Origin: Octopus sinensis
Lineage: Eukaryota
Length of the DNA: 64,000 bases
Reading direction: 5' to 3'
NCBI RefSeq assembly: GCF_006345805.1
Contig: NC_042998.1
Coordinates: forward strand, 61,194,001 to 61,258,000
Shown here: positions 485-49,989 of the stretch, piece after piece
How positions within the stretch are numbered: the first letter of the stretch is position 1
How the letters are laid out: every line of letters starts with the position of its first letter
Program-made: the position numbers and the translations under genes
Notes under the pieces: generated by a model
Told to the model about the DNA's origin: nothing
The model's input: the letters and a program-made list of their open reading frames with translations, nothing else
Database searches by the model: none

Positions 485-690
485 TTACTTTTTGCCTGAT
501 GGTAGATATTTAAGTGCAGGCAAACAGTTAGCATTTTCAAGAGCTTCTCTGAGTATTTCAAATGTATTTGTGTTACTATTGCAGCGCGTAAGCCATGTTT
601 CTAGCATCTGAAAGCTCATTATTATATCGTTATTACCATTATCCTTGTCGATATTTGTTAGGGCATCAGTAGCAATGCCCAGAGAGATAC
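485..690 (-). CDS. Terminal coding exon of a death-domain protein (C-terminal two thirds of the DD)
   Basis: Acceptor tattttgcag|, phase 1; reads GISLGIATDALTNIDKDNGNNDIIMSFQMLETWLTRCNSNTNTFEILREALENANCLPALKYLPSGKK*; DD hallmarks LGI, MLETW, TFEILREAL; joins seamlessly to ...KWDLV of the upstream exon. Confidence 0.88.
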
Positions 691-3225: not shown

Positions 3226-3676
3226 AGAAACGATACATTTGATAACATGCTCCCACACACAAGTCAGGGGTTTCACACTTAGAAGACTTTTTATCATATG
3301 TCAGCCAGATGACAATAGACATCTGGTTAAATAACACTAACTTATCGACAAACTCAGAAAAAAAGGTAAAACAAACAAAAACATTACCATTAACCCACCT
3401 GCTTACACCAACACAACGGTGTATTTCAGTTCCCAATTCCAAAAGACAATATCAACTCTATTGTGTTGTTTCATTTATCAGTATTACCAACCATGCTAAC
3501 CTCTGTAGATATTTTATGAAATTTTAGTAATATCAGTACCTTTTATAGAATTACATTACAGTTAATCTTTCAATTGGAAATTAGGAATGGAACCAGTTCA
3601 CAGACGTTCTAGAAAACAAAAGTTCAACTGTACGTAACTCTTATAGAAACCAATTAAGTATTCTTATTTTATACAC

Positions 3677-3727
3677 GTGCTAAACTTTCAACCAACTTTA
3701 GATCCTGCTTGCTCAGGTTTAGATTCT
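3677..3727 (-). pseudogene. Degraded copy of DD exon 1 (51 nt)
   Basis: tatttcag| ENLNLSKQDLKLVESLA; has lost the 18 nt encoding KWDLV and the donor is reduced to GTGTAT. Confidence 0.7.
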
Positions 3728-4226
3728 CTGAAATATTTAAAGTTTTACACTTTATAGTTAAATTTCTATATCTCTATTGGAATTTATATTTTATTGTTGT
3801 GAGATATTCCTATCATTAATGGTCAACTGGTGACCACTGTGATTTCAGTCAACATTTTTATACTTTCTACAGTGGTACCATGTAATAACTTGATATCTAG
3901 GTCCACAACAGAGCAAACTAGACTTCCTAAATCTCCTCTCTATATTAAGACATCCTACTTAATCTAACAATGTTGCAATTATCTCATTTATTTACCACTT
4001 GCTAAGGATTTTTATCACTTAGTTTTGTCTTTCATTAATTATATTTCTGTCATATCTATGATATGCCGTTGTCCTCTGATGTCTAGACTTTACTAACCAA
4101 TATTCTTCTCATCATCAGCTTAATTCCAATGTCAACCAGGGCTTGACCATCTAAGATCTAGCCACAAACACATGACACACCACTTCAATTAGGATCATCA
4201 TATACCTGCTCTCTCTCTCTCTCTCA

Positions 4227-4260
<34 letters not shown>

Positions 4261-4790
4261 TTCTCTCTCTCTCTTTCTGTTAAAGGTTGCCACTGGTAAT
4301 CTTGAATTTTAACTACCCACATTACAGTTCACCAGAATGTCATCTGATTCTTGAAATATTTGAAAACATTTACTTGTCATTCATCCTCCTTAATAAAGCA
4401 GTTTCTTTTTAGGTGAGCAAAGATTAGTTCTACACAGGTGAAATGGACAGTGGTAATGTGTCCTCAAATACTGAGCATTTGCAATCAACGTCATAAACAA
4501 CATATAACCGATCATCCATATATTGCAACGAAAGTATCTGGAGTGATACAAAAGAACTGATTCTCAAGAATATAGGTTACCTATATTTAAATCTCATCTA
4601 TACATCAAACAAAGTTATATTCCCCTTTGATATCTCCTTTATCAACGTGGTTGGGATTTTAGTAATATTAGTACCCTTTATAGAATTACATTACAGTTAA
4701 TCTTTCAATTGGAAATTAGGAATGGAACAAGTTCACTGATTTTCTAGCAAACTTATAGAAAACAATCAAGTATTCTTATTTTATACTTAC

Positions 4791-4862
4791 CAACAAGATC
4801 CCACTTTTGTGCTAAACTTTCAACCAACTGTAGGAGATCCTCATTGGTGAGTCTTACAGCTT
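4791..4862 (-). CDS. DD exon 1, copy B (72 nt, phase 1-1)
   Basis: tatttcag|...|GTAAGT; EAVRLTNEDLLQLVESLAQKWDLV, DD helices 1-2 with conserved Trp. Confidence 0.85.
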
Positions 4863-5875
4863 CTGAAATATTTAAAGTTTTACACTTTATAGTTAAATTT
4901 CTATATCTCTATTGGAATTTATATTTTATTGTTGTGAGATATTCCTATCATTAATGGTCAACTGGTGACCACTGTGATTTCACTCAACATTTTTATACTT
5001 TCTACAGTGGTACCATGTAATAACTTGATATCTAGGTCCACAACAGAGCAAACTAGACTTCCTAAATCTCCTCTCTATATTAAGACATCCTACTTAATTT
5101 AACAAAGTTGCAATTATCTCATTTATTTACCACTTGCTAAGGATTTTTATCACTTAGTTTTGTCTTTCATTAATTATATTTCTGTCATATCTATGATATG
5201 CCGTTGTCCTCTGATGTCTAGACTTTACTAACCAATATTCTTCTCATCATCTGCTTAATTCCAATGTCAACCAGGGCTTGGCCATCTAAGATCTAGCCAC
5301 AAACACATGACACACCACTTCAATTAGGATCATCATATACCTACTCTCTCTCTCTCTCTCTCTGTTAAAGGTTGCCACTGGTAATCTTGAATTTTAACTA
5401 CCCACATTACAGTTCACCAGAATGTCATCTGATTCTTGAAATATTTGAAAACATTTACTTGTCATTCATCCTCCTTAATAAAGCAGTTTCTTTTCAGGTG
5501 AGCAAAGATTAGTTCTACACAGGTGAAATGGACAGTGGTAATGTGCCCTCAAATACTGAGCATTTGCAATCAATGTCATAAACAACGTATAACCGATCAT
5601 CCATATATTGCAACAAAAGTATCTGGAATGGTACAAAAGAACTGATTCTCAAGAATATAGGTTACCTCTATTTAAATCTCATCTATACATCAAACAAAAT
5701 TACATTCCTCTTTGATATCTCCTTCATCAACGTGGTTGGAATTTTAGTAATATTATTTCCCTTTATAGAATTACATTACAGTTAATCTTTCAATTGGAAA
5801 TTAGGAATGGAACAAGTTCACTGATATTCTAGCAAACTTATAGAAAACAATCAAGTATTCTTATTTTATACTTAC

Positions 5876-5947
5876 CAACATGATTCCACTTTTGTGCTAA
5901 ACTTTCAACCAACTGTTGGAGATTCTCCTTGGTGAGTCTTACATCCT
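5876..5947 (-). CDS. DD exon 1, copy C (72 nt, phase 1-1)
   Basis: tatttcag|...|GTAAGT; EDVRLTKENLQQLVESLAQKWNHV. Confidence 0.8.
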
Positions 5948-6427
5948 CTGAAATATTTAAAGTTTTAGACTTTATAGTTAGATTTCTATATCTCTATTAG
6001 AATTTATATTTTATTGTTGTGAGATATTCCTATCATTAATGGTCAACTGGTGACCACTGTGATTTCAGTCAACATTTTTATACTTTCTACAGTGGTACCA
6101 TGTAATAACTTGATATCTAGGTCCACAACAGAGCAAACTAGACTTCCTAAATCTCCTCTCTATATTAAGACATCCTACTTAATCTAACAAAGTTGCAATT
6201 ATCTCTTTTATTTACCACTTGCTAACGATTTTTATCACTTAGATTTGTCTTTCATTAGTTATATTTCTGTCATATCTATGATATGCCGTTGTCCTCTGAC
6301 ATCTAGACTTTACTAACCAATATTCTTCTCATCATCTGCTTAATTCCAATGTCAACCAGGGCTTGGCCATCTAAGATTTAGCCACAAACACATGACACAC
6401 CACTTCAATTAGGATCATCATACAACT

Positions 6428-6475
<48 letters not shown>

Positions 6476-7717
6476 ACTCTCTCTCTCTCTGTTAAAGGTT
6501 GCCACTGGTAATCTTGAATTTTAACTACCCACATTACAGTTCACCAGAATGTCATCTGATTCTTGAAATATTTGAAAACATTTGCTTGTCATTCATCCTC
6601 CTTAGAAAAACAGTTTCTTTTAAAATGAGCAATGATTAGTTCTACACAAGTGAAATGGACAGTGGTAATATGCCCTAAAATACTATGCATTTGCACTCAA
6701 CATCATAAGCTACATATAACATATCATCCATATATTGCAACAAAAGTACCTGGAATGGTACAACAGAACGGATTCTCAAGAATATAGGTTACCTCTATTT
6801 AAATCTCATCTATACATCAAACAAAGTTACCTTCCCCTTTGATATCTCTTTATCAATGTGGTTGGCATTGATAGGGTAGTAACCAAGAAACCAGAAAATT
6901 TGAGGACTCGGAACTTACACCTGTGTAGCAGGGTCTGATTGACAGAAACTGTCTGGTGATGTTATTGTTAATATAAGAACAACATGAAAAAGAATATCTA
7001 ATCCCATTCATGTTACCAACGTTATACTACATTTATCACTGATGTTAATTAAGACCAACTAATTACAAAATGTCACAGTAATGCTTTATAAAATATACCT
7101 AAATAGTATCATAAATATACAGAAATGTTTCACATATTGTTTTAGGAGACAATAACATCTGGACCTTATTGGACTATAGAAGTCAATAATGCCAGTTTTT
7201 AGAGAAGTGGTTCTGTGCCCAAGAAAAACTGTAGAATAACTTACACAGATGGTAATAAGATATAAATCTGTTGGGTGAGCGTAAAAGATGATGCTACGAT
7301 AAAATCAGGTTAAATTTCAGACATACAAATGTAATTCAGTTAATGAATAATATCTGATTCATTACCATGTTAACAGGTTGTATATATAATACAAAAAAAC
7401 ACTGTCTGACATGCAATACAAGATATCTATATAAATTGTACATAATCTGACTAGAAAATAAGTGACTTTCATTACAGTGAATATGATTATGTCTCAGCAC
7501 AGATCTATATAGTAGAAATTTCATCATCATCATCATCATCATCATCACCATCATCATATTTGTCGTCGTTTTCATTTAATATCTGCTTTCCATGCTGAGG
7601 TCTGAATGTGAGGTCTTGCAAGCCTGAAGGCTCCTATCTGATCTGATATACATGCATACATATATATGCATATATATATATATATGTGTATGTACATATA
7701 TATATATATATGTATAT

Positions 7718-9248: not shown

Positions 9249-9338
9249 CATTATCAACATCATCAATTTCATCATCTCCACCATCATCATCTTCTTCATT
9301 ATCATCATCAGATTTGACTGAGGGCTGGTATTGATGTT
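9249..9338 (-). CDS. Acidic cassette exon, 90 nt, phase 1-1
   Basis: ttacttactag|...|GTGAGT; EHQYQPSVKSDDDNEEDDDGGDDEIDDVDN. Confidence 0.72.
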
Positions 9339-24743: not shown

Positions 24744-24872
24744 CATCATAAACTTCAGAGTGTTGAACAGAATGCTCAAGATCCTCATATTTCTCACAAT
24801 TATCATCATCTTCATCGTCGACTGATACCCGCTCTCCATGCATAGGTCTGAGTGAGGGCTGCCATTGATGTC
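24744..24872 (-). CDS. Acidic cassette exon, 129 nt, phase 1-1
   Basis: ttacttactag|...|GTGAGA; GHQWQPSLRPMHGERVSVDDEDDDNCEKYEDLEHSVQHSEVYD. Confidence 0.75.
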
Positions 24873-27328
24873 CTAGTAAGTAACACTGTCTTTGATTATT
24901 GAATTCTCAAGATAGAAAATCATTAACCATCTCACAAATAAATTTATCTTAGCTTCAACCATTCAGTCATATCATTCTCCACATCTCTTTCAAGTCATTG
25001 TTCTTATCCTCAGTTTCTGGTAACTTTCAGTTCCTGAATCCTCATTATTCTTCCGTTATCTTGTAAACTGCTCACTTTCTCAACATGTCTTCATGATTGT
25101 AAAAACACATCAAAGAGCAAGGAGAATTGTATAATATTATGAGATGCAAGACAACCTGACCAGTGCTATCACTAAGAGAAAATGGCCACAGTACATACAT
25201 GAAAGTGATTGGTGAATGAGAGGAGACAGCATAATTTTGAGTGGAACCTTCAATCTAATTGGTCACATTGGAGTTTGGTGCAGTGTCTCAGATTGCCAGC
25301 TCTGGTGAAACTGTCTAACCCAGGCCAGCATGGACAATGGACGTTAAATGGTGATGATGATGACAATATTATTAGTGCCTGTGCTACAATAAAACATAAC
25401 CAAGACCCTATATATAATGTTTGGTGTTAAGAAGGGTATCTTGTCATCTAAACTACAAAGAATTTAAGTGAGATGCGTTTGTACCTCAAACAGTCAAAGT
25501 GGAGGTTAACTCTGAATAAGAACTGACTTGGACATTGATGACCCATCTAATCGATAGCAGCATGAAAGTAGATGATGAATAATAATGACACTATGATTTA
25601 TTATTTTCTATTTATTATTTTGCATCTTGCAGCCTGTATCTAATCTTGAGGACTTGGAACTTACACCTGTGTAGCAGGGTCAGACTGACAGAAACTGTCT
25701 TGTAATGTTATTGTTAATATATGAACAACATCAAAAGGAATATCTAATCCCATTCTTGTTACCAACGTTATACTACATTTGTCACTGAAGTTAATTAAGA
25801 CCAAATAATTACAAAACATCACAGTAATGCTTTATATAATATATCTAAATAGTATCATAAATATACAGAAATGTTTCACATTTTGTTTTAGGACACAATA
25901 ACATCTAGACCTTATTGGACTAAAAAAGTCAATAATACCAGTTTGTAGAGAAGTGGTTGCGTGCCCAAGAAAAACAGTAGAACTATTTACGCAGACAGTA
26001 ATAAGGTATAAATCTGTTGGGTGAGCGTACAAGACGATGCTATGACAAAATCAGGTTAAATTTCAGACATACAAATGTAAAGCAGTTGATGAATAATATC
26101 TGATTCATTACCATGTTAACAGGTTTTATATGTAATACAAAAAAACAACGTCTGACATTGCAATACTAGATATCTATATAAATTGTATATAATCTGACTA
26201 AAATATAAGTGACTTTCAATACAGTGAATATGATTATGTCTCCACACAGATCTATATTGTAGAAGTTCCATCATCATCGTCATTATCATCATCGTCATCA
26301 TCGTTGTTTAATATTCGCTTTCCATGCTGAGGTGTGACTGAGGCTACACAAGGCTCCAATTTGATCTGATATGTATGCATACATATGTAAACATATATAT
26401 ATTTGAATACATATATATGCATATATATACATATACATACATAGATATATCACAGTGAAAGTATTAACTCACATTACAATAGCGATTTTATTGTTTCACT
26501 TTTGACAAGTAATACTGAAATAGTGTAAGAGATAAGAGATTGCTCCAGGATCACATTAGGCAAGAAGTTGAAAATTTATTTCGCCCATGACACTGCATGG
26601 ACCTAAAGTAAGACATGTGTGAATTTTGAATGAGATAATTTGGGTAGTTCTCGAGTTTTAGTGATGCACACATACATAGAGACAGACAGATAAAATTTTA
26701 CGCGTACAGATATATGCATTCATAATTATATCTGTATTTATATATATAGACTATCATACATATTCTCAGCTGAGATATTCTGGGAAATTACTCTGGCAAG
26801 AGATGATATCTCATATCAAACATCAGACTACCTTAAAAATGTGACATCTTCATAAGATGATAAATCAACAAGAACTTCTGGATAACGATTTTGGAACCAA
26901 ATGAAATTGTCTCTAGGAAAATTTGACCAGTTGAAAACATTTTCATTTGTGATTTGTTATTGAATCTCCTACATTAGAAAGCTAAAAATGAGGTTCTTAT
27001 AAGTAATTTTGACTTTAATTATCAGATTCACAAGATGTTAATACATCATTAATCATCACTGTTGGTTCACAACTGATGGTCATTCAGTCTTATCATTCTC
27101 CAAATCTTTCAAATTACCATTTGTATCCTCATTTTCTCACAACTTTCACTCCCTGCATCCTCAGTATTCTTCTGTCAACACTTCTCAATGTGTCCCCTTG
27201 AATGATAAAACACATCATAAGAGCAGTAAGAACTGTCAAATTTTATGGGATGCAAGAAAAACTGACCAATGCTAGTGCTCAAAGGAAAACTTATAGAAAT
27301 GAATTTGGTACTTCAGTTTTATACTCAC

Positions 27329-27394
27329 CATTTGACGGAGATTTTCTTTGCTGGGTTGTACCTGGCTGTACATTTCTAGTCTGCAATTCTGTGT
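27329..27394 (-). CDS. Cassette exon, 66 nt, phase 1-1
   Basis: gaatttcag|...|GTGAGT; DTELQTRNVQPGTTQQRKSPSN. Confidence 0.72.
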
Positions 27395-29062
27395 CTGAAA
27401 TTCATAAAATGAATTGTTATAGTTTATACTAAAATTTACCAGCATTCACATTCACACAAAAAGCTATAATTATTAATCTAAACATATACCAATTAAGGAC
27501 TTTCACAGCAACACTGACCAAATGATTTCACAGTTATATTTTCTAATGTTTGTTGAGATTTTGTGATTGAGTCTCATACTTTACCAAGACCAACATTGAT
27601 ATTCTAGTAAGTAACACTGTCTTTGATTATTGGATTCTCAAGATATTTGTAAATCATTAACCATCTCACAAATAAATTTGTCTTAGCTTCAACCATTTAG
27701 TCTTGGCATTCTCCACCTCTCATTGTTCTTATCCTCATTTTCTTATAATTTCAGTCCCTGCATCCTCATCATTCTTCCGTTATCACATAAAATTCTCACT
27801 TTCTCAATATGTCATCATGATTGTAAAAACACATGAAAGAGCAATGAGAATTGTATAATATTATGAGATGCAAGACAACCTGACCAGTGCTGGCGCTATG
27901 AGAAAATGGCCCCAGTACACACATGAACTTACACCTGTGTAGCAGGGTCTGACAGACAGAAACTGTCTTCGATGTTATTGTTAATATAAGAACAACATCA
28001 AAAGGAATATCTAATTCCATTCATGTCACCAAAGTTACACTACAAATTTTCACTGATGTTAATTAAGACCAACTAATTACAAATGGTCACAGAAATGATT
28101 TATATAATATATCTAAATAGTGTCATAAATATACAGAAATGTTTCACATGTTGTTTCAGGAGACAATAACATCTAGACCTCATTGGACTATAGAAGTCAA
28201 TAATCCCAGTTTGTAGAGAAGTGGTTGTGTGCCCACGAAAAACAGTAGAATTACTGACACAGAAGGTAATAAGGTTTAAATCTGTTGGGTGAGAGTACAA
28301 GATGATGCTATGAGAAAACAGGGTTCAATTTCAGACATACAAATGTAAATCAGTTAATAAATAATAACTGATTCATTACCATGTTAACAGGTTTCATATG
28401 TAATACAAAAAAACACTGTCTGTCATTGCAATAAAAGATATCTATACAAATTGTATATAATCTGACTAGAAAAGAAGTGACTTTCATTACAGAGAATATG
28501 ATTACGTCCCAGCACAGATCTCTATTGCAGAATTTCCTTCTCCTCCTCATCCTTTAACACCACAACCGCCATCACCACCACCGCCGCCGCCGCCCCCGCC
28601 CCCACCGCCGCACCACCATCACTGCAAGCACCACCACCAGGACCCACACCACCTCCATCACCACCACCACAACCACCACCACCATCATCATCATCGTTGT
28701 TTAATATCTGCTTTCCACGCTGAGGTGTGACTGAGGGCTGGGAAGCCTAAAGGCTGCACCAGGTTCCAATCTGATCTCATATGTGTGCATATATATGCAA
28801 ACATACATATACATGCACACGTATATGTGCATATATATTTACATACATATACATTCATAGATATTTCACAGTGATGTTATTAACTCACATTACAAAATGT
28901 ATGGACCTTATGTAAGACATGTATGAAATTTGAATGAAATCAGTCGGGTAGTTCTTGAGTTTTAGTGTCGCACACATACAGACAGACTGACAGGCATTTA
29001 CATACACACATACATGCATTCTCAGTTATACACATACATATATGTATATATATGTATATAGA

Positions 29063-29873
29063 CTAATAGCAGTATTGCCCGGCTCGTGTGCTCTTGTGTT
29101 CTATGCACGCGTGAATTAAGCTAAACTTAGATGAAGTTCAATTAAAATTCAATTATTTTGGTTTTAAAATGAAGCATTTTATACCCTTATGTGTTCTATT
29201 TCCTCAATAGGAAGTACGTAGAAGCGTTTCATAAATTTTTGTTGATCAAATAATTGCATTGTTGAATTATTCTTTAAGATCAGTATTTCTCAACAGGGAT
29301 TTCAGGGTAGAGATCCAGGAGCTGCTGGCGATGTATCGTGATGATCAAAAATCCGGCCTGCTAAAATTTGGTTAAAGTGATTCAAACTGCAGACTCAATG
29401 CAAAATGGTTACATTTAATTCAAAGCATTAAAAATGTTATGTAAACAATTGGTATGTGTTCACATAGTCCAAATGATTTATACGAAAATACCCTCCAGGC
29501 TATATCCCGAAAAGTCATTTCTTTGCCGAATTTCTATAATGTTTATGGCGATTCGTTTTTATATCTTGATTTTTGATTTTTCATGCAATTTACGCATGCT
29601 TGCACACGTGGTGAACACAGATCATGTCAAAAAGCTGACTGATTAAAGTTCACTATTCAACACATGGGATAAAGCCTAAACAAACACATTATCGATTTTT
29701 GCAATTGCGAGATAAATTTGGAACAGAAATAGCGCAGTTCAATTTTCATTCACCTAAACTTTAAGTGACCCATTTTTGGTGGTTCTACGATCTCTTGGCT
29801 AGGAGATGTGCCAGGAAGTTAAACCCAAAGACACACACACAGACAAACAAGTTGAGTTTCATATATATATAGA
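29063..29873 (-). mobile_element. Helitron-like element (family B); further copies at 32184-32994, 35328-36143, 59205-60013, fragment at 61995-62091
   Basis: Minus strand begins A|TCTATATATATATGAAACTC and ends ccgggcaatactgctattag|T (degenerate CTAG); occupies the same monomer site as Helitron A in opposite orientation. Confidence 0.55.
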
Positions 29874-30449
29874 TAATACATATTCTAATCTGAGACATTC
29901 TGGGAAGATACTCCGGCAAGAGATCATATCTCATATCAAACATCAGACTACCTTAAAAATGTGACATCTTCATAAGATGATAAATCAACAAGAACTTCTG
30001 GATAACGATTTTGGAACCAAATGAAATTGTCTCTAACAAATTTTACCAGTTGAAAAAGTTTTTATTTGCGATTTGTTATTGAATCTCCTACATTAGAAAG
30101 CTGAAAATGAGGTTCTTATAAGTAATTTTGACTTTAATTATCAGATTCACAAGATGTTAATACATCATTAATCATCACTGTTGGTTCACAACTGATGGTC
30201 ATTCAGTCTTATCATTCTCCACCTCTCTTTCAAATCACCATTTGTATCCTCATTTTCTCACAACTTTCACTCCCTGCATCCTCAGTATTCTTCTGTCAAC
30301 ACTTCTCAATGTGTCCCCTTGAATGATAAAGCACATCATAAGAGCAGTAAGAACTGTAAAATTTTATGGGATGCAAGAAAAACTGACCAATGCTAGTGCT
30401 CAAAGGAAGACTTATAAAAATGAATTTGGTACTTCAGTTTTATACTCAC

Positions 30450-30515
30450 CATTTGACGGTGATGTTCTTTGACGGGTTGTGACCGGCTTTTTATTTCTAG
30501 GCGACAATTCTATGA
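30450..30515 (-). CDS. Cassette exon, 66 nt, phase 1-1
   Basis: gaatttcag|...|GTGAGT; VIELSPRNKKPVTTRQRTSPSN; phases 0 and 2 contain TAG, so only phase 1 is open. Confidence 0.75.
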
Positions 30516-33500
30516 CTGAAATTCATAATATGAAGTGTTATAATTTATAGTAAAATTTACCAGCATTCAAATTCATACAAAAAGCTATAATTATTAATCT
30601 AAACATATACCAATTAAGGACTTTCACAGCAACGCTGACCAAATGATTTCACAGTTATATTTTCTAATGTTTGTTGAGATTTTGTGATTGAGCCTCATAC
30701 TTTACCAAGACCAACATTGATATTCTAGTAAGTAACACTGTCTTTGATTATTGGATTCTCAAGATATTTGTAAATCATTAACCATCTCACAAATAGATTT
30801 GTCTTAGCTTCAACGATTTAGTCTTGGCATTCTCCACCTCTCATTGTTCTTATCCTCATTTTCTTATAATTTCAGTCCCTGCATCCTCATCATTCTTCCG
30901 TTATCACATAAAATTCTCACTTTCTCAATATGTCATCATGATTGTAAAAACACATGAAAGAGCAATGAGAATTGTATAATATTATGAGATGCAAGACAAC
31001 CTGACCAGTGCTGGCGCTATGAGAAAATGGCCCCAGTACACACATGAACTTACACCTGTGTAGCAGGGTCTGACAGACAGAAACTGTCTTCGATGTTATT
31101 GTTAATATAAGAACAACATCAAAAGGAATATCTAATTCCATTCATGTCACCAAAGTTACACTACAAATTTTCACTGATGTTAATTAAGACCAACTAATTA
31201 CAAATGGTCACAGAAATGATTTATATAATATATCTAAATAGTGTCATAAATATACAGAAATGTTTCACATGTTGTTTCAGGAGACAATAACATCTAGACC
31301 TCATTGGACTATAGAAGTCAATAATCCCAGTTTGTAGAGAAGTGGTTGTGTGCCCACGAAAAACAGTAGAATTACTGACACAGAAGGTAATAAGGTTTAA
31401 ATCTGTTGGGTGAGAGTACAAGATGATGCTATGAGAAAACAGGGTTCAATTTCAGACATACAAATGTAAATCAGTTAATAAATAATAACTGATTCATTAC
31501 CATGTTAACAGGTTTCATATGTAATACAAAAAAACACTGTCTGTCATTGCAATAAAAGATATCTATACAAATTGTATATAATCTGACTAGAAAATAAGTG
31601 ACTTTCATTACAGAGAATATGATTACGTCCCAGCACAGATCTCTATTGCAGAATTTCCTTCTCCTCCTCATCCTTTAACACCACAACCGCCATCACCACC
31701 ACCGCCGCCGCCGCCCCCGCCCCCACCGCCGCACCACCATCACTGCAAGCACCACCACCAGGACCCACACCACCTCCATCACCACCACCACAACCACCAC
31801 CACCATCATCATCATCGTTGTTTAATATCTGCTTTCCACGCTGAGGTGTGACTGAGGGCTGGGAAGCCTAAAGGCTGCACCAGGTTCCAATCTGATCTCG
31901 TATGTGTGCATATATATGCAAACATACATATACATGCACACGTATATGTGCATATATATTTACATACATATACATTCATAGATATTTCACAGTGATGTTA
32001 TTAACTCACATTACAAAATGTATGGACCTTATGTAAGACATGTATGAAATTTGAATGAAATCAGTCGGGTAGTTCTGGAGTTTTAGTGTCGCACACATAC
32101 AGACAGACTGACAGGCATTTACATGCACACATACATGCATTCTCAGTTATACACATACATATATGTATATATATGTATATAGACTAATAGCAGTATTGCC
32201 CGGCTCGTGTGCTCTTGTGTTCTATGCACGCGTGAATTAAGCTAAACTTAGATGAAGTTCAATCAAAATTCAATTATTTTGGTTTTAAAATGAAGCATTT
32301 TATACCCCTATGTGTTCTATTTCCTCAATAGGAAGTACGTAGAAGCGTTTCATAAATTTTTGTTGATCAAATAATTGCATTGTTGAATTATTCTTTAAGA
32401 TCAGTATTTCTCAACAGTGATTTCAGGGTAGAGATCCAGGAGCTGCTGGCGATGTATCGTGATGATCAAAAATCCGGCCTGCTAAAATTTGGTTAAAGTG
32501 ATTCAAACTGCAGACTCAATGCAAAATGGTTACATTTAATTCAAAGCATTAAAAATGTTATGTAAACAATTGGTATGTGTTCACATAGTCCAAATGATTT
32601 ATACGAAAATACCCTCCAGGCTATATCCCGAAAAGTCATTTCTTTGCCGAATTTCTATAATGTTTATGGCGATTCGTTTTTATATCTTGATTTTTGATTT
32701 TTCATGCAATTTACGCATGCTTGCACACGTGGTGAACACAGATCATGTCAAAAAGCTGACTGATTAAAGTTCACTATTCAACACATGGGATAAGGCCTAA
32801 ACAAACACATTATCGATTTTTGCAATTGCGAGATGAATTTGGAACAGAAATAGCGCAGTTCAATTTTCATTCACCTAAACTTTAAGTGACCCATTTTTGG
32901 TGGTTCTACGATCTCTTGGCTAGGAGATGTGCCAGGAAGTTAAACCCAAAGACACACACACAGACAAACAAGTTGAGTTTCATATATATATAGATAATAC
33001 ATATTCTAATCTGAGACATTCTGGGAAGATACTCCGGCAAGAGATCATATCTCATATCAAACATCAGACTACCTTAAAAATGTGACATCTTCATACGATG
33101 ATAAATCAACAAGAACTTCTGGATAACGATTTTGGAACCAAATGAAATTGTCTCTAACAAATTTTACCAGTTGAAAAAGTTTTTATTTGCGATTTGTTAT
33201 TGAATCTCCTACATTAGAAAGCTGAAAATGAGGTTCTTATAAGTAATTTTGACTTTAATTATCAGATTCACAAGATGTTAATACATCATTAATCATCACT
33301 GTTGGTTCACAACTGATGGTCATTCAGTCTTATCATTCTCCACCTCTCTTTCAAATCACCATTTGTATCCTCATTTTCTCACAACTTTCACTCCCTGCAT
33401 CCTCAGTATTCTTCTGTCAACACTTCTCAATGTGTCCCCTTGAATGATAAAACACATCATAAGAGCAGTAAGAACTGTCAAATTTTATGGGATGCAAGAA

Positions 33501-33570
33501 AAACTGACCAATGCTAGTGCTCAAAGGAAGACTTATAAAAATGAATTTGGTACTTCAGTTTTATACTCAC

Positions 33571-33636
33571 CATTTGACGGTGATGTTCTTCGACGGGTTG
33601 GGACCGGCTTTTTATTTCTAAGCGACAATTCTATGA
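33571..33636 (-). CDS. Cassette exon, 66 nt, phase 1-1
   Basis: gaatttcag|...|GTGAGT; VIELSLRNKKPVPTRRRTSPSN. Confidence 0.72.
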
Positions 33637-36600
33637 CTGAAATTCATAATATGAAGTGTTATAATTTATAGTAAAATTTACCAGCATTCAAATTCATACA
33701 AAAAGCTATAATTATTAATCTAAACATATACCAATTAAGGACTTTCACAGCAACGCTGACCAAATGATTTCACAGTTATATTTTCTAATGTTTGTTGAGA
33801 TTTTGTGATTGGGCCTCATACTTTACCAAGACCAACATTGATATTCTAGTAAGTAACACTGTCTTTGATTATTGGATTCTCAAGATATTTGTAAATCATT
33901 AACCATCTCACAAATAGATTTGTCTTAGCTTCAACCATTTAGTCTTGGCATTCTCCACCTCTCTTTCAAGTCATTGTTCTTATCCTCATTTTCTTATACT
34001 TTCAGTCCCTGCATCCTCATCATTCTTCCGTTATCACATAAAATTCTCACTTTCTCAATATGTCATCATGATTGTAAAAACACATGAAAGCGCAATGAGA
34101 ATTGTATAATATTATGAGACGCAAGACAACCTGACCAGTGCTGGCGCTATGAGAAAATGGCCCCAGTACACACATGAACTTACACCTGTGTAGCAGGGTC
34201 TAACAGACAGAAACTGTCTTCGATGTTATTGTTAATATAAGAACAACATCAAAAGGAATATCTAATTCCATTCATGTCACCAAAGTTACACTACAAATTT
34301 TCACTGATGTTAATTAAGACCAACTAATTACAAATGGTCACAGAAATGATTTATATAATATATCTAAATAGAATCATAAATATACAGAAATGTTTCACAT
34401 GTTGTTTCAGGAGACAATAACATCTAGACCTCATTGGACTATAGAAGTCAATAATCCCAGTTTGTAGAGAAGTGGTTGTGTGCCCACGAAAAACAGTAGA
34501 ATTACTTACACAGAAGGTAATAAGGTTTAAATCTGTTGGGTGAGAGTACAAGATGATGCTATAAGAAAATAGGGTTCAATTTCAGACATACAAATGTAAA
34601 TCAGTTAATAAATAATGTCTGATTCATTACCATGTTAGAAGGTTTCATATGTAATACAAAAAAACTCTGTCTGTCATTGCAATAAAAGATATCTATACAA
34701 ATTGTATATAATCTGATAGAAAATAAGTGACTTTCATTACAGAGAATATGATTATGTCCCAGCACAGATCTCTATTGCAGAATTTCCTTCTCCTCCTCAT
34801 CCTTTAACACCACAACCGCCATCACCACCACCAACGCCGCGGCACCGCCACCACCACCGCCGCTAGCACCACCACCGCACCCGCCAGCACCACCACCAGG
34901 ACCAGCACCACCTCCACCGCCACCACCACGACCGCCACCACCATCACCATCATCATCATCGTTGTTTAATATGTGCCTTCCACGCTGAGGTGTGACTGAC
35001 GGCTGGGAAGCCTAAAGGCTGTACCAGGTTCCAATCTGATCTCATATGTGTGCACATATATGCAAACATACATATACATGCAACCGTATATGTGCATATA
35101 TATTTACATACATATACATTCATAGATATATCACAATGAAATTATTAACTCACATTACAAAATGTATGGACCTTATGTAAGACATGTATGAAATTTGAAT
35201 GAAATCAGTCGCGTAGTTCTGGAGTTTTAGTGTCGCACACATACAGACAGACTGACAAGCATTTACATGCACACAAACATGCATTCTCAGTTATACACAT
35301 ACATACATGTATATATATGTATATAGACTAATAGCAGTATTGCCCGGATCGTGTGCTCTTGTGTTCTATGCACGCGCGAATTAAGCTAATCTTGGATGAA
35401 GTTCAATCAAAATTCAATTATTTTGGTTTTAAAATCAAGCATTTTATACCCTTATGTGTTCTATTTCCTCAATAGGAAGTACGTAGAAGCGTTTCATAAA
35501 TTTTTGTTGATCAAATAATTGCATTGTTGAATTATTCTTTTATATCATTATTTCTCAACGGGGATTTCAAGGTAGAGATCCAGGAGCTGCTGGCGATGTA
35601 TCGTGATAATCAGAATTCCAGCTAGCTAAAATTTGGTTAAAGGGATTCAAACTGCAGACTCAATGCAAAATGGTTACATTTAATTCAAAGCATTAAAAAT
35701 GTTAAGTAAACAATTGGTATGTGTTCACATAGTCCAAATGATTTATACGAAAATACCTTCCAGGCTATATCCCGAAAAGCCATTTCTTTGCTGAATTCCA
35801 CTAATGTTTATGGCGATTCGTTTTTATATCTTGATTTTGGATTTTTCATGTAATTTACGCATGCTTGTACGCATGGTGAACACAGATAACGTCAAAAAGC
35901 TGACTGATTAAAGTTCACTATTCAACGCATGGGATAAGGCGTAAACAAACGCATTATCGATTTTTGCAATTGCGAGATGAATTTGGAACAAAAAGAGCGC
36001 AGTTCAATTTTCATTCGCCTAAACTTTAAGTGACCCATTTTTGGTGGTTCTAGGATCTGTTGGCTAGGAGGAGAGGTGCCAGGAAGTTAAACCCACAGAC
36101 AAACACACAGACAAAGAAGTTGAGTTTCATATATATATATAGATAATACATATTCTAATCTGAGACATTCTGGGAAGATACTCCGGCAAGAGATTATATC
36201 TCATATCAAACATCAGACTACCTTAAAAATGTGACATCTTCATACGATGATAAATCAACAAGAACTTCTGGATAACGATTCTGGAACCAAATGAAATTGT
36301 CTCTAATAAATTTTACCAGTTGAAAACGTTTTTATTTGCAATTTGTTATTGAATCTCCTACGTTAGAAAGCTGAAAATGTGGTTCTTATAAGTAATTTTG
36401 ACTTTAATTATCAGATTCACAAGATGTTAATACATCATTAATCATCACTGTTGGTTCACAACTGATGGTCATTCAGTCTTATCATTCTCCAAATCTTTCA
36501 AATCACCATTTGTATCCTCATTTTCTCACAACTTTCACTCCCTGCATCCTCAGTATTCTTCTGTCAACACTTCTCAACGTGTCCCCTTGAATGATAAAAC

Positions 36601-36717
36601 ACATCATAAGAGCAGTAAGAACTGTCAAATTTTATGGGATGCAAGAAAAACTGACCAATGCTAGTGCTCAAAGGAAAACTTATAGAAATGAATTTGGTAC
36701 TTCAGTTTTATACTCAC

Positions 36718-36783
36718 CATTTGACGGTGATGTTCTTTGACGGGTTGTGGCCGGCCGTTCAGTTCTAGGCGGCAATTCTCTGC
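36718..36783 (-). CDS. Cassette exon, 66 nt, phase 1-1
   Basis: gaatttcag|...|GTGAGT; GRELPPRTERPATTRQRTSPSN. Confidence 0.72.
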
Positions 36784-37929
36784 CTGAAATTCATAATATG
36801 AAGTGTTGTAATTTATAGTAAAATTTACCAGCATTAAAATTCACACAAAAAGCTATAATTATTAATCTAAACATATACCAATTAAGGACTTTCACAGCAA
36901 CATTGACCAAATGATTTCACAATTATATTTTCTAATGTTTGTTGAGATATTGTGATTGGGCCTCATACTTTACCAAGACAAACATTGATGTTCTAGTAAG
37001 TAACACTGATTGGTTTTTGGATTCTCAAGATATTTGTAAATCATTAACCATCTCACAAATAAATTTGTCTTAGCTTCAACCATTTAGTCTTGGCATTCTC
37101 CACCTCTCTTTCAAGTCATTGTTCTTATCCTCATTTTCTTATAATTTCAGTCCCTGCATCCTCATCATTCTTCCGTTATCACTTAAACTTCTCACATTCT
37201 CAACATGCCTTCATGATTGTAAAAACACATGAAAGAGCAACGAGATATGTATAATATTATGAGATGCAAGACAACCTGACCAGTGCTAGCGCTACGAGAA
37301 AATGACCCCAGTACACACATGAATTTACACCTGTGTAGCAGGGTCTGACAGACAGAAACTGTCTTCGATGTTATTGTTAATATAAGAACAACATCAAAAG
37401 GAATATCTAATTCCATTCATGTCACCAAAGTTACACTACAAATTTTCACTGATGTTAATTAAGACCAACTAATTACAAACGCTCACAGAAATGATTTATA
37501 TAATATATCTAAATAGTATCATAAATATACAGAAATGTTTCACATGTTGTTTCAGGAGACAATAACATCTAGACCTCATTGGACTGTAGAAGTCAATCAT
37601 AGTTTTTAGTAAAGTGGTTGTGTGCCCACGAAAAACAGTAGAATTACTTACACAGAAGGTAATAAAGTTTAAATCTGTTGGGTGAGAGTATAAGATGATG
37701 CTATGAGATAATAGGGTTCAATTTCAGACATACAAATGTAAATCAGTTAATAAATAATATCTGATTCATTATCATGTTAAGAGGTTTCATATGTAATACA
37801 AAAAAACACTGTCTGTCATTGCAATTAAAGATATCTATACAAATTGTATATAATCTGACTAGAAAATAACTGACTTTCATTACAGAGAATATGATTATGT
37901 CCCAGCATAGATCTCTTTTGCAGAATTTC

Positions 37930-38280
37930 CTTCTCCTCCTCATCCTTTCACACCACAACCGCCATCATCACCACCACCGCCGCCGCCACCACCAACACCC
38001 GCCAGCACCACCACCAGGACAAGCACCACCACCATCACCACAACCTCAACCACAACCACCAACACCACCATCATCATCATCATCATCATCATCAACATCA
38101 TCATCATCTTCATCATCATCATCATCATCATCATCAACATCATCATCATCATCATCATCATCATCAGCATCACCACCATCATCACCATCACCACCACAAC
38201 GACGACGACGACGACCACCACCAACACCACCACCACAACCACCACCATCATCATCATCATCATTATCATCAACATCATTG
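37930..38280. repeat. Compound (CAT)n/(CAC)n/(CCG)n/(GAC)n trinucleotide tract; related tracts at ~28545, 31665, 34800, 44420, 46765, 52255, 54595, 63720
   Basis: Direct reading; each lies at the tail of the SINE remnant in the monomer. Confidence 0.95.
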
Positions 38281-38704
38281 TTGCTTAATATCCGCATTCG
38301 ATGCTGAGGTCTCACTGAAGGCTGGCAATCCTAAAGGCTGCAACAGGCTCCAATTTGATGTGATATGTACGCATATATATGTAAACATATATATATTTGT
38401 ATACATATATATGCATATATATACATATACATACATAGATATATCACAGTGAAAGTATTAACTCACATTACAATAGTGATTTTATTGTTTCACTTTTGAC
38501 AAGTAATACTGAAATAGTGTTAGAGATAAGAGATTGCTCCAGGATCACATTAGGCAAGAAGTTGAAAATTTGTTTGGCCCATGATACTGCATGGACATTA
38601 AGTAAGGCATGTGTGAAATTTGAATGAAATCATTTGGATAGTTCTAGAATTTTAGTGATGCAGAGAGACAAACATTTACACGCACAGATACATGCATTCT
38701 CAGT

Positions 38705-38743
<39 letters not shown>

Positions 38744-40946
38744 AGAGAGAGAGAGAGAGAGACTATCATACTCATTCTAGCCTGAGACATTCTGGGAAGA
38801 TACTCCTGTAAGTGATGATATCTCATATCACACATCAGACTACCGTAAATATCTGACATCTTCATAAGATGATAAATCAAGAAGACGACGACGACGACCA
38901 TCATCATCATCATTATCATCATTGTTGCTTAATATCCGCATTCGATGCTGAGGTCTCACTGAAGGTTGGCAAGCCTAAAGGCTGCACCAGGCTCCAATTT
39001 GAACTGATATGTATGCATATATATGTAAACATATATATATTTGTATACATATATATGCATATATATGCATATACATACATAGAAATATCACAGTGAAAGT
39101 ATTAACTCACATTACAATAGTGATTTTATTGTTTCACTTTTCACAAATAATTGTACCTTAGCTTCAACCAGTCTGTCTTGGCATTCTCTACCTCTCTCTG
39201 AAGTCATTATTCTTATCCTCATTTTCTTGTAACTTTCAGTCCCTGCATCCTCATTATTCTTCCGTCATCACTTAAACGTCTCACTTTCTCAACATGTCTT
39301 CATGATTGTAAAATCACATCAGAGAGCAACGAGATATGTATAATATTATGAGATGCAAGACAACCTAACCAGTGCAAGCACTATGAGAAAATGGCCCCAG
39401 TACACACTTGAAAGTGATTTGTGAATGAGAGGAGACAGCTTAATTTTGAGTGGAACCTACAATAGAATTGCGGACATTGGAGTCTGGTACTGCCACTCAG
39501 CTTGCCAGCTCTGGTCAAACTCTCCAACTCATGCCAGCTTGGACACTGGATGTTATATGGTGATGATGATGTTAATCTTATTATTGCCTGTGTTACAATA
39601 GAACAGAAACAAAATCCTTTATATAATGTTTGCTGTTAAGAAGAGTATCTTGTCATGTAAAATCCAGAGTATTTAAGTGAGATGTGTGTGTACCTGAAGC
39701 ATTCAAAGTTGATGTTAACTCTGAATGAGAACAGATTTGGACATTGATGACCCATCTAATTGTTGGGAGCATGGATGCAGATGATGAATGATAATGACAC
39801 TATCATTTATTATTTTGTATTTATTATTTTGCATCTTGCAGCCTGTATCTAATCTTTATGACTTGGAACTTACACCTGTGTAGAAGGGTCTGACTGACAG
39901 AAACTGTCGTGTAATGTTTTTGTTAATAATGAGAGCAACATCACAAGTAAAATCTAATCCCATTGATGTTACCAACTTTATACTACATTTGTCACTGATA
40001 TTAATTAAAACAAACTAATTACAAAAGGTCACAGTAATGCTTTATAAAATATACCTAAATAGTATCATAACTATACAGAAATGTTTCACATATTGTTTCA
40101 GGAAACAATAACATCTGGATATTATTGGACTATTGAAGTCAATAATCAGTTTGTAGAGAAGTGGTTCTGTGCACAAGACAAACAGTAGAATTACTTACAC
40201 AGATGGTAATAAGGTTTAAATCTGTTGGGTGAGGGTACAAGATGATGCCATGATAAAATCAGGTTAAATTTCAGACATACAAATGTAAATCAGTTAATGA
40301 ATAATATCTGATTCATTATCATGTTAACAGGTTGTATATGTAATACAAAAAACACTGTCTGACATTGCAATACTAGATATCTATATAAATTGTATATAAT
40401 CTGACAAAAAAATAAGTGACTTTATTAGAGTGAATATGATTATTTCTCAGCACAGATCTATATTGTAGACGTTCCATCAAATCATCATCATCATCATTGT
40501 CATCGTCGTTTAATATCTGCTTTCTATGCTTAGGTCTGACTGATTTCTGGCAAGCGAGAAGCCTGAACCAGGCTCCAATCTGATATGATATGTATGCATA
40601 TACATGTAAACATACATATACATGCATACATATATATGCATATATATACAGACATATGCATACATAAATATATCACAGTGAAACTATTAACTCACATTAC
40701 AATAGTGATTTTATTGTTTCACTTTTGACAAGTAATACTGAAATAGTGTTAGAGATAAGAGATTGCTCCAGGAACACATTAGGCAAGAAGTTGAAAATTT
40801 GTTTGGCCCATGACACTGCATGGACCTTAAGTAAGGCCTGTGTGAAAATTGAATGAAATCATAGTGGTAGTTCTCTAGTTTTAGTGATACACACATACAA
40901 ACAGACAGACAGACACACATTTACACTCACACTTACATGCATTCTT

Positions 40947-41374
40947 AGGCGCAGGAGTGGCTGTGTGGTAAGTAGCTTATCTACCAAACACATGGTTGTG
41001 GGTTCAGTCCCACTGCGTGGCACCTTGGGCAAGTGTCTTCTACTATAGCCTTGGGCCGACCAAAACCTTGTGAGTGGATTTGGTAGACGGAAACTGAAAG
41101 AAGACCATCGTATATATGTATATATATGTATGCGAGTGTGTATTTGTGTGTCTGTGTTTGTCCCCTAGCATTGCTTGACAACCGATGCTGGTGTGTTTAT
41201 GTCCCCGTTACTTAGCGGTTCGGCAAAAGAGACCGATAGAATAAGTACTGGGCTTACAAAAGAATAAGTCTCGGGGTCGAGTTGCTCGACTAAAGGCGGT
41301 GCTCCAGCATGGCCGCAGTCAAATGACTGAAACAGGTAGAAGAATAAAAGAATAAAAAGAAAGAATAAAAAGAA
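40947..41374 (+). mobile_element. Full-length tRNA-derived SINE with (AAGAATA)n tail; copies at 48946-49373 and 56949-57375
   Basis: aggcgcaggagtggctgtgtggtaag head, gggttcagtcccac B-box-like motif, internal (TA)/(TG) tract, A-rich tail. Confidence 0.85.
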
Positions 41375-41954: not shown

Positions 41955-41990
41955 CATCTTGCATTTCATATCCATCCTCCATGTGTGAGT
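41955..41990 (-). CDS. Cassette micro-exon, 36 nt, phase 1-1
   Basis: gaatttcag|...|GTGAGT; DSHMEDGYEMQD. Confidence 0.68.
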
Positions 41991-44657: not shown

Positions 44658-44689
<32 letters not shown>

Positions 44690-45858: not shown

Positions 45859-45915
45859 CATGTGGATGTGATGTACTTTGACCTGTTGTACTTGGCTGTC
45901 CAAATCTATATATGT
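45859..45915 (-). CDS. Cassette exon, 57 nt, phase 1-1
   Basis: gaatttcag|...|GTGAGT; DIYRFGQPSTTGQSTSHPH; aligns to the 66-nt type with a 9-nt in-frame deletion. Confidence 0.7.
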
Positions 45916-46633: not shown

Positions 46634-46668
<35 letters not shown>

Positions 46669-49953: not shown

Positions 49954-49989
49954 CATCTTGCATTTCATATCCATCCTCCATGTGTGAGT
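49954..49989 (-). CDS. Cassette micro-exon, 36 nt, phase 1-1
   Basis: Identical to 41955-41990, same splice sites. Confidence 0.6.

What the first reader, a model, noticed from the sequence alone, without database searches (positions are those of the whole stretch)
3523..6855. First half of the death domain is triplicated: two intact, diverged alternatives and one decayed copy
Seen: the 72-nt exon for DD helices 1-2 occurs at 5876-5947 and 4791-4862 with canonical sites. The two copies differ at 7 nt, 6 of them non-synonymous (A/D, N/K, D/N, L/Q, D/N, L/H), while a ~190-nt intron stretch differs at about 2 positions. The copy nearest the last exon (3677-3727) has lost KWDLV and its GTAAG donor. 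Established: helices 1-2 contribute to homotypic DD interaction surfaces. Inference: mutually exclusive use would yield two DDs with different charge and partner specificity; including both would give a DD with a duplicated N-terminal hairpin.
Basis: partly seen in the sequence, partly recalled or inferred. Interest (0 to 1): 0.8.

Follow-up and report, generated by a model that had tools for sequence, protein, structure and literature searches.

The report
Duplicated death-domain helix exon in octopus
A short exon encoding the first helix of a death domain has been copied three times in an annotated Octopus sinensis gene, but the public gene models splice the two intact copies in together rather than choosing between them, so this is an ordinary tandem exon duplication with an unusual protein product.

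Summary
On the minus strand a 1.1-kb unit is repeated three times (6866..3517). Each unit carries a copy of the exon for death-domain (DD) helix 1 and the start of helix 2. Copies A (5947..5876) and B (4862..4791) are intact 72-nt phase 1-1 exons that differ at 7 nt and 6 amino acids. Copy C (3727..3677) has lost 21 nt and its consensus donor.

The window is an exact piece of Octopus sinensis chromosome CM016860.1, inside RefSeq gene LOC115232413 ("uncharacterized protein"). All nine isoform models I could retrieve (X1-3, X5-10) end ...E-DVRLTKENLQQLVESLAQKWNHV-E-AVRLTNEDLLQLVESLAQKWDLV-GISLG.... So A and B are both included in series and C is skipped. The isoforms differ only in the N-terminal cassette exons.

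Nothing in the sequence enforces mutual exclusion. The A-B intron is 1013 nt, both introns are GT-AG, co-inclusion keeps the frame, and intron complementarity is no better than in shuffles.

AlphaFold predicts a normal DD built on copy B, with copy A as an extra N-terminal helix.

The 6:1 non-synonymous ratio is the chance expectation. The exon does diverge faster than the adjacent intron (p about 0.002-0.03), but only under a recombinant-origin model.

Verdict: a genuine but ordinary tandem exon duplication. The mutually exclusive reading is not supported.

The parts
3517..6866 (-). Tandem array of three 1085-1135-nt units (A 6866..5737, B 5736..4652, C 4651..3517). Each unit carries one copy of the DD helix-1 exon plus about 1 kb of intron, including a (GA)n tract of variable length.
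   Evidence: three copies, 90-97% identical, found only here in the window
5876..5947 (-). Exon copy A, 72 nt, phase 1-1, encodes (E)DVRLTKENLQQLVESLAQKWNHV. Present in all nine retrieved RefSeq isoforms.
4791..4862 (-). Exon copy B, 72 nt, phase 1-1, encodes (E)AVRLTNEDLLQLVESLAQKWDLV. Present in all nine retrieved isoforms, directly after A. Predicted to form helix 1 of the DD bundle.
3677..3727 (-). Copy C, a pseudo-exon of 51 nt (NLNLSKQDLKLVESLA). It has a 3-nt deletion and a 20-nt deletion that removes the invariant Trp and the consensus donor. It is still in frame with a weak gtgtat donor. Skipped in all retrieved isoforms.
4863..4883 (-). Inferred recombination breakpoint in unit B. 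Upstream of it B resembles C (2.1% divergence); from the exon onward B resembles A.
   Evidence: the site pattern switches between alignment columns 946 and 968
485..690 (-). Terminal coding exon, covering the rest of the DD from helix 2 to helix 6 (GISLGIATDALTNIDKDNGNNDIIMSFQMLETWLTRCNSNTNTFEILREALENANCLPALKYLPSGKK) and the TAA stop at 487..485.
9249..9338 (-). Nearest upstream cassette exon (EHQYQPSVKSDDDNEEDDDGGDDEIDDVDN), spliced to exon A in isoform X7. It is homologous to exon 24872..24744, which is used instead in isoforms X1-3, X5, X6, X8 and X9.
24744..60655 (-). Eleven further phase 1-1 cassette exons of the same gene, each inside a 3.1-kb or 8-kb tandem unit: 60655..60590, 57990..57955, 53748..53692, 49989..49954, 45915..45859, 41990..41955, 36783..36718, 33636..33571, 30515..30450, 27388/27394..27329, 24872..24744. 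Seven of them, plus the 9338..9249 exon, are each missing from at least one retrieved model; two more are absent only from the N-terminally truncated X9.
   Evidence: isoform sequences

Best explanation
This is a tandem triplication of the phase 1-1 exon that encodes death-domain helix 1 and the first residues of helix 2. It lies in the annotated Octopus sinensis gene LOC115232413.

The whole coding region of this gene is an array of tandemly duplicated, frame-neutral cassette exons. In the annotated mRNAs, copies A and B are both spliced in, one after the other, and the decayed copy C is skipped.

The protein is therefore a disordered repeat region followed by a canonical six-helix DD built on copy B, preceded by one extra, paralogous helix-1-like segment (copy A).

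The array most likely grew by unequal crossing-over. Unit B looks like a hybrid: its intron upstream of the exon resembles C, and its exon and downstream intron resemble A.

Shown here: the repeat, the splice signals, the gene identity, the exon composition of nine isoform models, and the DD fold prediction. Inferred: that the models reflect real transcripts, the crossover history, and any function of the extra helix.
For: - Repeat and exon anatomy.
- Gene identity: the window is the exact reverse complement of CM016860.1 inside the gene that encodes XP_036369584.1 and XP_029658130.1.
- Exon usage: all nine retrieved isoforms (X1, X2, X3, X5-X10) carry ...E-DVRL..NHV-E-AVRL..DLV-GISLG... The variation between isoforms lies entirely in the N-terminal cassettes.
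- Splice signals: every exon in the window with the signature tttcag|...G|gtragtataa is used in the models. C is the only copy without this signature.
- Frame: all junction codons are G|NN, so any combination of exons stays in frame.
- DD identity: paralogues at 31-49% identity include adhesion-GPCR-DD and ANK/RING-DD proteins. The five scanned here score 24.3-51.6 bits against PF00531.
- Structure with A+B: the AlphaFold2 model of the C-terminal 125 residues has pLDDT 82 and pTM 0.77. Its helices are 16-33 (copy A), 40-60 (copy B running into helix 2), then four more.
- Fold matches: 25 of the top 26 Foldseek PDB matches are death domains, aligned over about 77-90 contiguous columns. That fits B through helix 6.
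- Structure without A: the model folds the same way, with pLDDT 86 and pTM 0.78.
- Conservation: both A and B keep the core positions conserved across the family (L10, W21, G25). All six differences fall at positions that vary within the family.
- Crossover history: the site patterns switch sharply just 5' of the exon.
Against: - I could not see the RNA-seq evidence behind the Gnomon models, so co-inclusion rests on annotation, not on junction reads.
- Isoform X4 was not retrieved, and ten guessed sequences were absent from the collection.
- N-terminal cassettes with very similar intron flanks are skipped in some isoforms, so occasional skipping of A or B is plausible.
- This protein itself scores below the Pfam gathering threshold (19.9 and 17.7 against 22.6 bits), and there is no Death-domain hit on the full-length protein.
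- No orthologue from O. bimaculoides or O. vulgaris turned up, so conservation of the arrangement is unknown.
- Three sequences give only an unrooted comparison. The crossover history therefore assumes a roughly clock-like neutral rate.
Confidence: 0.72

Rival explanations
1. Alternative or mutually exclusive use. A and B are chosen one at a time, giving two DD variants with different helix-1 surfaces. B has a net charge of -2 and A of 0.
For: - A and B have the same length, the same phase and identical splice signals.
- All six amino-acid differences lie at surface positions that vary within the family, and the core is kept.
- The exon diverges faster than the neighbouring intron under the recombinant model (p=0.002-0.026).
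- Cassettes with similar flanks are skipped in some isoforms, and the homologous exon pair 24872 and 9338 is used alternatively in the models.
- Isoform X4 was not seen.
Against: - Nine of nine retrieved isoforms contain both A and B.
- No enforcing mechanism is present. The intron is 1013 nt, so there is no steric block. Both introns are GT-AG. The 72-nt length means there is no frame or NMD penalty for including both.
- The best complementarity between the units and the unique flanks is 12-15 bp, which is weaker than for shuffled units.
Confidence: 0.13
2. Neutral passenger. The duplication is recent and one of the two included copies, most likely A, is a tolerated but functionless N-terminal extension that is drifting. 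The gene as a whole may be a fast-evolving, lineage-specific product of repeat expansion.
For: - pN/pS is 1.5, and 6 of 7 changes being non-synonymous equals the chance expectation (p=0.57).
- Whole-unit intron divergence of 4.7% is not significantly below the exon's 9.7% (p=0.065).
- Three of the B-specific changes cluster within 20 nt of the inferred breakpoint. That fits repair-associated mutation rather than selection.
- No orthologue was found in other octopus proteomes.
- The DD model folds equally well without A.
Against: - Neither A nor B has a stop codon, an indel or a core substitution, whereas C has decayed heavily.
- Relative to the matched neutral proxy of 2.2%, non-synonymous divergence is about five-fold higher (p=0.003). 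Drift alone does not give that.
Confidence: 0.12
3. Assembly artefact. The extra copies are collapsed or expanded haplotypes or mis-joined reads, not real tandem copies.
For: The region is extremely repeat-rich, and I could not examine raw reads.
Against: - The units differ by 2-10%, in (GA)n length, and by specific deletions.
- The divergence is mosaic, not uniform.
- The RefSeq proteins contain the A-B junction codon GAA (E), which requires both copies on one transcript.
Confidence: 0.03

Closest known systems
Mutually exclusive exon clusters derived from tandem exon duplication (for example Dscam exons 4/6/9, ATE1 exons 7a/7b, SCN alpha exons 5a/5b; reviewed in PMC9013439, PMC6071210, PMC5740500)
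   Same: Tandem copies of one exon together with flanking intron. The copies have identical length, phase and splice signals, and the amino-acid differences sit on an otherwise conserved structural element.
   Different: Here both copies are in every retrieved transcript model. No competing RNA structure, steric constraint, spliceosome incompatibility or frame penalty exists, so the defining 'one and only one' behaviour is absent.
Internal protein repeats built by tandem duplication of symmetrical phase 1-1 exons (classical exon-shuffling modules; from general knowledge, not tested here)
   Same: All 14 internal coding exons in the window are phase 1-1 and a multiple of 3 nt long. They lie in tandem genomic units and are co-included, exactly as in genes that grow by exon amplification.
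   Different: The duplicated piece here is not a self-contained module. It is about 28% of a globular six-helix domain, so co-inclusion yields a domain plus a spare copy of one of its helices.
Octopus C-terminal death-domain family (adhesion GPCR with LRR+GPS+7tm_2+DD, P0003; ANK/RING 'MIB2-like'-DD, P0004 and P0010; 'RIPK1' P0037; 'PIDD1-like' P0009). An adhesion GPCR with a Death domain in O. bimaculoides is mentioned in PMC6408891.
   Same: 31-49% identity across the whole DD, a shared motif pattern (L..VA..LG..W..VG..LGI ... SFQML..W ... LR.ALE.AEC..AL), and a C-terminal position in the protein.
   Different: Each aligned paralogue matches with a single helix-1 segment. LOC115232413 has two in series plus a decayed third in the intron. 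It is also more divergent: LA instead of LG, IIMSFQML instead of EQSFQML, and below the Pfam gathering score.
Solved death domains: ankyrin-G (4o6x), RIPK1 (6ac5, 9kv7), TNFR1 (1ich, 9v9c), FADD
   Same: These are the best sequence hits (4o6x E=8e-4) and the best fold hits (TM 0.6-0.8 normalised to the target).
   Different: Identity is low (14-26%). No binding partner or oligomer type can be inferred.

Membership tests
Death domain (Pfam PF00531, DD superfamily) | Sequence match to the PF00531 profile at or above the gathering score (22.6 bits) | tested here: not met
   Single-copy constructs score 19.9 bits (A) and 17.7 bits (B). Full-length X1 gives no Death hit at E<=0.01. Paralogues at 36-49% identity do pass, at 24.3-51.6 bits.
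Death domain (Pfam PF00531, DD superfamily) | Six-helix bundle fold | tested here: met
   AlphaFold2 models have pLDDT 82-86 and pTM 0.77-0.78. 25 of the top 26 Foldseek PDB matches are death domains, with TM 0.45-0.80 normalised to the target. This is a prediction, not an experiment.
Death domain (Pfam PF00531, DD superfamily) | Conserved core residues shared with bona fide family members | tested here: met
   The invariant columns W21, G25, L28, L54, W57, L71 and L87 of the 22-sequence family alignment are all present.
Death domain (Pfam PF00531, DD superfamily) | Homotypic DD-DD assembly | not testable with these tools
   Needs binding or structural experiments.
Mutually exclusive exon cluster | Tandem homologous exons of equal length and phase with intact splice sites | tested here: met
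   A and B are both 72 nt, phase 1-1, cag|...|gtaagtat.
Mutually exclusive exon cluster | Mature transcripts contain exactly one exon of the cluster | tested here: not met
   Nine of nine retrieved RefSeq isoform proteins contain A and B in series. Junction reads were not examined and X4 was not retrieved.
Mutually exclusive exon cluster | A mechanism that prevents co-inclusion: steric hindrance, U2/U12 incompatibility, competing RNA structures, or a frame-shift with NMD | tested here: not met
   The A-B intron is 1013 nt. Both introns are GT-AG. The 72-nt length keeps the frame. The best unit/flank complementarity is 12-15 bp, below the shuffled controls.
Tandem exon duplication with co-inclusion (internal repeat) | A direct tandem repeat containing the exon plus flanking intron, a symmetrical phase, and both copies in the mRNA | tested here: met
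   for the repeat and the phase. for co-inclusion, at the level of annotated models.

The most novel reading that the evidence does not exclude
The two diverged helix-1 copies in one polypeptide are both functional and compete for the same slot in the six-helix bundle. Alternatively, copy A docks onto and masks a DD interaction surface. Either way, a single transcript would yield a fold-switching or auto-inhibited death domain. The roughly five-fold excess of non-synonymous change over neighbouring intron would then reflect selection for the two helices to differ.
Probability: 0.1. Interest if true: 0.6.

Novelty: new member of a known kind. Interest (0 to 1): 0.3.

Why it matters
If the annotation is right, this is a natural case in which part of a globular signalling domain, one helix of a death domain, is duplicated and kept in frame inside the same protein rather than being resolved into alternative isoforms. 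That makes it a small, testable example of how exon amplification in a repeat-rich gene can add a spare structural element to a fold.

It also shows that symmetrical duplicated exons need not become mutually exclusive.

Beyond that it is an uncharacterised, possibly lineage-specific octopus gene with no functional data, so the wider significance is modest. The practical value of this check is to stop a 'two alternative death domains' story from being built on sequence alone.

Tried and rejected
- The word-indexed protein search with the 91-aa B-type DD found nothing, although the same database holds proteins containing that exact string. Only the exhaustive HMMER search and a full-length query recovered the gene. 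The first negative was therefore a sensitivity limit, not absence.
- Isoform X4: ten plausible cassette combinations of 341-343 aa, including ones lacking A or B, are not in the collection. X4 remains unknown.
Only the A+B and B-only constructs were modelled.
- Two RNA duplex scans timed out or gave meaningless whole-sequence duplexes. I replaced them with an ungapped Watson-Crick/GU run search with shuffled controls, which was negative. An exact-complement search gave only chance-level 11-14-mers.
- Rfam found no RNA family in the window.
- There is no second DD or other copy of the 1.1-kb unit in the window. Conversion from a nearby paralogous exon therefore cannot explain copy C's divergence, at least within these 64 kb.
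- Literature: no paper mentions LOC115232413, and none combines death domain with tandem exon duplication.
- I considered positive selection on the basis of the 6:1 ratio and rejected it as uninformative.
- I considered copy C as a functional short variant because it stays in frame. I rejected this because it lacks the family-invariant Trp, lacks the gene's own donor signature, and is absent from all models.
Full report
**What is in the sequence**

The gene runs on the minus strand.
- Exon A is 5947..5876 and exon B is 4862..4791. Both are 72 nt, with a ...tttcag| acceptor and a |gtaagtataaaa donor.
- They translate, after a split first codon, to DVRLTKENLQQLVESLAQKWNHV (A) and AVRLTNEDLLQLVESLAQKWDLV (B).
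- They differ at 7 nt. Six changes alter the protein. The seventh is the second base of the split codon (G|AG vs G|AA, both Glu).
- The last coding exon (690..485) supplies GISLGIATDALTNIDKDNGNNDIIMSFQMLETWLTRCNSNTNTFEILREALENANCLPALKYLPSGKK and the stop.
- Copy C (3727..3677) has a 3-nt deletion and a 20-nt deletion. The second removes the codons for QKWDLV and the GTAAG donor. Copy C is therefore in frame but has a poor donor.

**The repeat**

A direct-repeat search, a three-way MAFFT alignment and a self-BLAST show a clean three-unit tandem array from 6866 to 3517.
- The units are 1085-1135 nt and each contains a (GA)n tract of a different length.
- The unit occurs nowhere else in the window.
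- tblastn with the DD peptides finds no other DD in the 64 kb.

**How different are exon and intron?**

That holds only locally.
- A and B differ at 4 positions in the 200 nt upstream of the exon and at 4 in the 139 nt downstream.
- Over the whole unit the intron differs at 48 of 1013 sites (4.7%). Against that, the exon's 9.7% is not significant (p=0.065). In addition, 173 of 920 sliding 72-nt windows reach 7 differences.

The divergence is mosaic.
- From the start of the unit to 21 nt before the exon, almost all variable sites are A-specific: 35 against 7 B-specific and 9 C-specific.
- From the exon onward they are C-specific: 19 against 3 and 4.
- With a roughly constant neutral rate, this means unit B is a hybrid. 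Its upstream intron is C-like and its exon and downstream intron are A-like, as one unequal crossover between an older A-C pair would produce. The breakpoint falls at 4863-4883.

Under that history, the neutral A-B divergence expected in the exon is about 2.2% (22/1014).
- The observed 9.7% is then high. It gives p=0.002 against the pooled proxy, p=0.026 against the A-like flank alone and p=0.010 against the flanking 300 nt upstream plus the downstream stretch.
- The 6:1 non-synonymous ratio carries no information, because 57.5 of the 72 sites are non-synonymous (binomial p=0.57, pN/pS 1.5).
- Three of the B-specific changes lie within 20 nt of the breakpoint, so a repair-associated mutation cluster is a live neutral alternative.
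- Copy C's exon (17.6% from A) is not significantly more diverged than its own downstream intron (10.2%, p=0.13). That is consistent with plain decay.

**What gene is this?**

- The word-indexed protein search with the DD failed.
- The exhaustive HMMER search returned a 330-aa protein that is 96% identical to the query and matches it in two stretches. This protein is XP_029658130.1, 'uncharacterized protein LOC115232413 isoform X7 [Octopus sinensis]'.
- A full-length query and cluster look-ups then gave isoforms X1, X2, X3, X5, X6, X8, X9 and X10.
- The contig look-up returned the 68.7-kb gene on CM016860.1 (assembly GCA_006345805.1). The window is the exact reverse complement of locus positions 8153-72152.
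- The whole window therefore lies inside this gene, from its third coding exon to the 3' UTR.

**Which copies are spliced?**

Every one of the nine isoform proteins ends ...E DVRLTKENLQQLVESLAQKWNHV E AVRLTNEDLLQLVESLAQKWDLV GISLGIATD...SGKK.
- A and B are both present, in genomic order, joined by the predicted G|AA Glu codon. C is absent.
- The isoforms differ only upstream, in which N-terminal cassette exons they include.

Mapping the proteins back onto the window shows 14 internal coding exons.
- All are phase 1-1 and a multiple of 3 nt long.
- All carry the signature tttcag|...G|gtragtataa, or ttactag| / cacag| variants of the acceptor.
- Apart from the three DD exon copies, each lies in a 3.1-kb or 8-kb tandem genomic unit.
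- Every exon with that signature is used in some model. C is the only copy without it.
- About 35 nt upstream and the donor-proximal intron of the DD exon resemble the flanks of the N-terminal cassettes.

In short, the gene is an exon-amplification array, and the DD helix-1 triplication is its 3'-most instance. In the models A and B behave as constitutive exons, whereas at least seven N-terminal cassettes are variably skipped. One homologous pair (24872..24744 and 9338..9249) is used alternatively.

**Is mutual exclusion mechanistically possible?**

None of the known mechanisms is present.
- The A-B intron is 1013 nt, so there is no steric block.
- Both introns are GT-AG with near-identical signals.
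- Seventy-two nucleotides keeps the frame when both exons, either one, or neither is included.
- Exact-complement and Watson-Crick/GU run searches between the units and the unique flanking introns gave at best 12-15 bp. That is weaker than for dinucleotide-shuffled units.

**Is it a death domain, and what does the duplication do to it?**

- Pfam Death scores are sub-threshold for this protein: 19.9 and 17.7 against 22.6 bits. There is no Death hit on the full-length protein.
- The best PDB sequence hits are the ankyrin-G and RIPK1 DDs.
- The representative search shows a family of octopus C-terminal DDs at 31-49% identity. It includes an LRR/GPS/7tm_2 adhesion GPCR, ANK/RING 'MIB2-like' proteins, and 'RIPK1' and 'PIDD1-like' proteins. 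The five scanned here pass PF00531 at 24.3-51.6 bits.
- In the 22-sequence alignment all invariant columns are kept here. All six A/B differences sit at positions that vary in the family, and the core positions are identical in A and B.
- AlphaFold2 on the native C-terminal 125 residues (A+B), with nine aligned sequences, gives pLDDT 82 and pTM 0.77. The predicted helices are 16-33 (copy A), 40-60 (copy B running into helix 2), 65-75, 79-92, 101-110 and 114-119.
- With one exception at rank 23, the top 26 Foldseek hits are death domains aligned over about 77-90 contiguous columns. That span fits B through helix 6 and leaves A as an extra N-terminal helix.
- The construct without A folds identically, with pLDDT 86 and pTM 0.78.
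- From general knowledge of DD assemblies (not tested here), helix 1 contributes to the type Ia surface and the helix 1-2 junction to type IIIb. An extra helix-1 copy could therefore compete for the slot or mask a surface. This is speculation.

**Comparison with what is known**

The anatomy is that of a tandem exon duplication, the raw material of mutually exclusive exon clusters (PMC9013439, PMC6071210, PMC5740500). It fails the defining test of exclusivity. It behaves instead like exon amplification of symmetrical phase 1-1 modules, with the peculiarity that the amplified piece is a fragment of a globular domain. The gene and its isoforms are already in RefSeq. I found no paper describing the duplication.

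**Verdict**

This is an ordinary kind of event in a very repeat-rich gene, and it produces a mildly unusual protein. The remaining uncertainty is whether the annotated co-inclusion is backed by junction reads, and whether the extra helix does anything.

Noticed in passing
window 1-64000 (= CM016860.1, Octopus sinensis, reverse strand): The whole window lies inside one RefSeq gene, LOC115232413. Its CDS start is about 5.15 kb beyond the high-coordinate end of the window. The first coding exon (ATGCGAGATG|gtgagtataa) looks like a decayed copy of the DSHMEDGYEMQD cassette.
   Followed up: partly
window 24744-60655, minus strand: Eleven short phase 1-1 cassette exons (36-129 nt) each sit in a 3.1-kb or 8-kb tandem genomic unit. 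They encode repeats such as VIELPPRKEQPGTTRQRTSPSN, DIYRFGQPSTTGQSTSHPH and DSHMEDGYEMQD. The RefSeq isoforms differ by skipping individual cassettes.
   Followed up: partly
window 24744-24872 and 9249-9338, minus strand: Two homologous exons (GHQWQPS... and EHQYQPS..., both acidic) are used alternatively in the models. X7 uses the 9338 exon, most isoforms use the 24872 exon, and X10 uses neither.
   Followed up: no
window 27388/27394, minus strand: Tandem acceptors 6 nt apart (tttcag|ACACAG|AA) add or remove the dipeptide DT. The long form appears only in isoforms that skip the preceding cassette (30515..30450).
   Followed up: no
window 4863-4900 and 4775-4790 compared with, for example, 30516-30560 and 30436-30449: The intron sequence immediately flanking the DD helix-1 exon resembles the flanks of the unrelated N-terminal cassettes (about 85% over 26-35 nt upstream, E=2e-4 to 0.03; donor G|GTAAGTATAAAA vs G|GTGAGTATAAAA). 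This hints at a shared origin or a shared splicing element.
   Followed up: partly
window 15361-15660 (minus) and about 8400-8650 (minus): Retroelement-like ORF tails (…GRGRPRKTWDEVVKHDLRTLGL…DRDLWKYAVHEK…) sit within introns.
   Followed up: no
window 1-110, 8092-8171, 10122-10279: Copies of a SINE-like element (…CATGCTAGCATGGGTTGGAC…GGGTCTGGGAAGCCAGG…) preceded by (ATC/GAT)n tracts.
   Followed up: no
window 4211-4283, 5343-5365, 6429-6493: A (GA)n/(CT)n microsatellite occupies the same position in each 1.1-kb unit but has a different length in each. This argues against the copies being an assembly duplicate.
   Followed up: yes
window 320-325, minus strand: An AATAAA motif lies about 160 nt downstream of the stop codon and is a plausible poly(A) signal.
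   Followed up: no
tool behaviour: The word-indexed protein search missed proteins containing the exact 91-aa query, but found them with the full-length query. Negative results from short queries in that tool should not be read as absence.
   Followed up: yes
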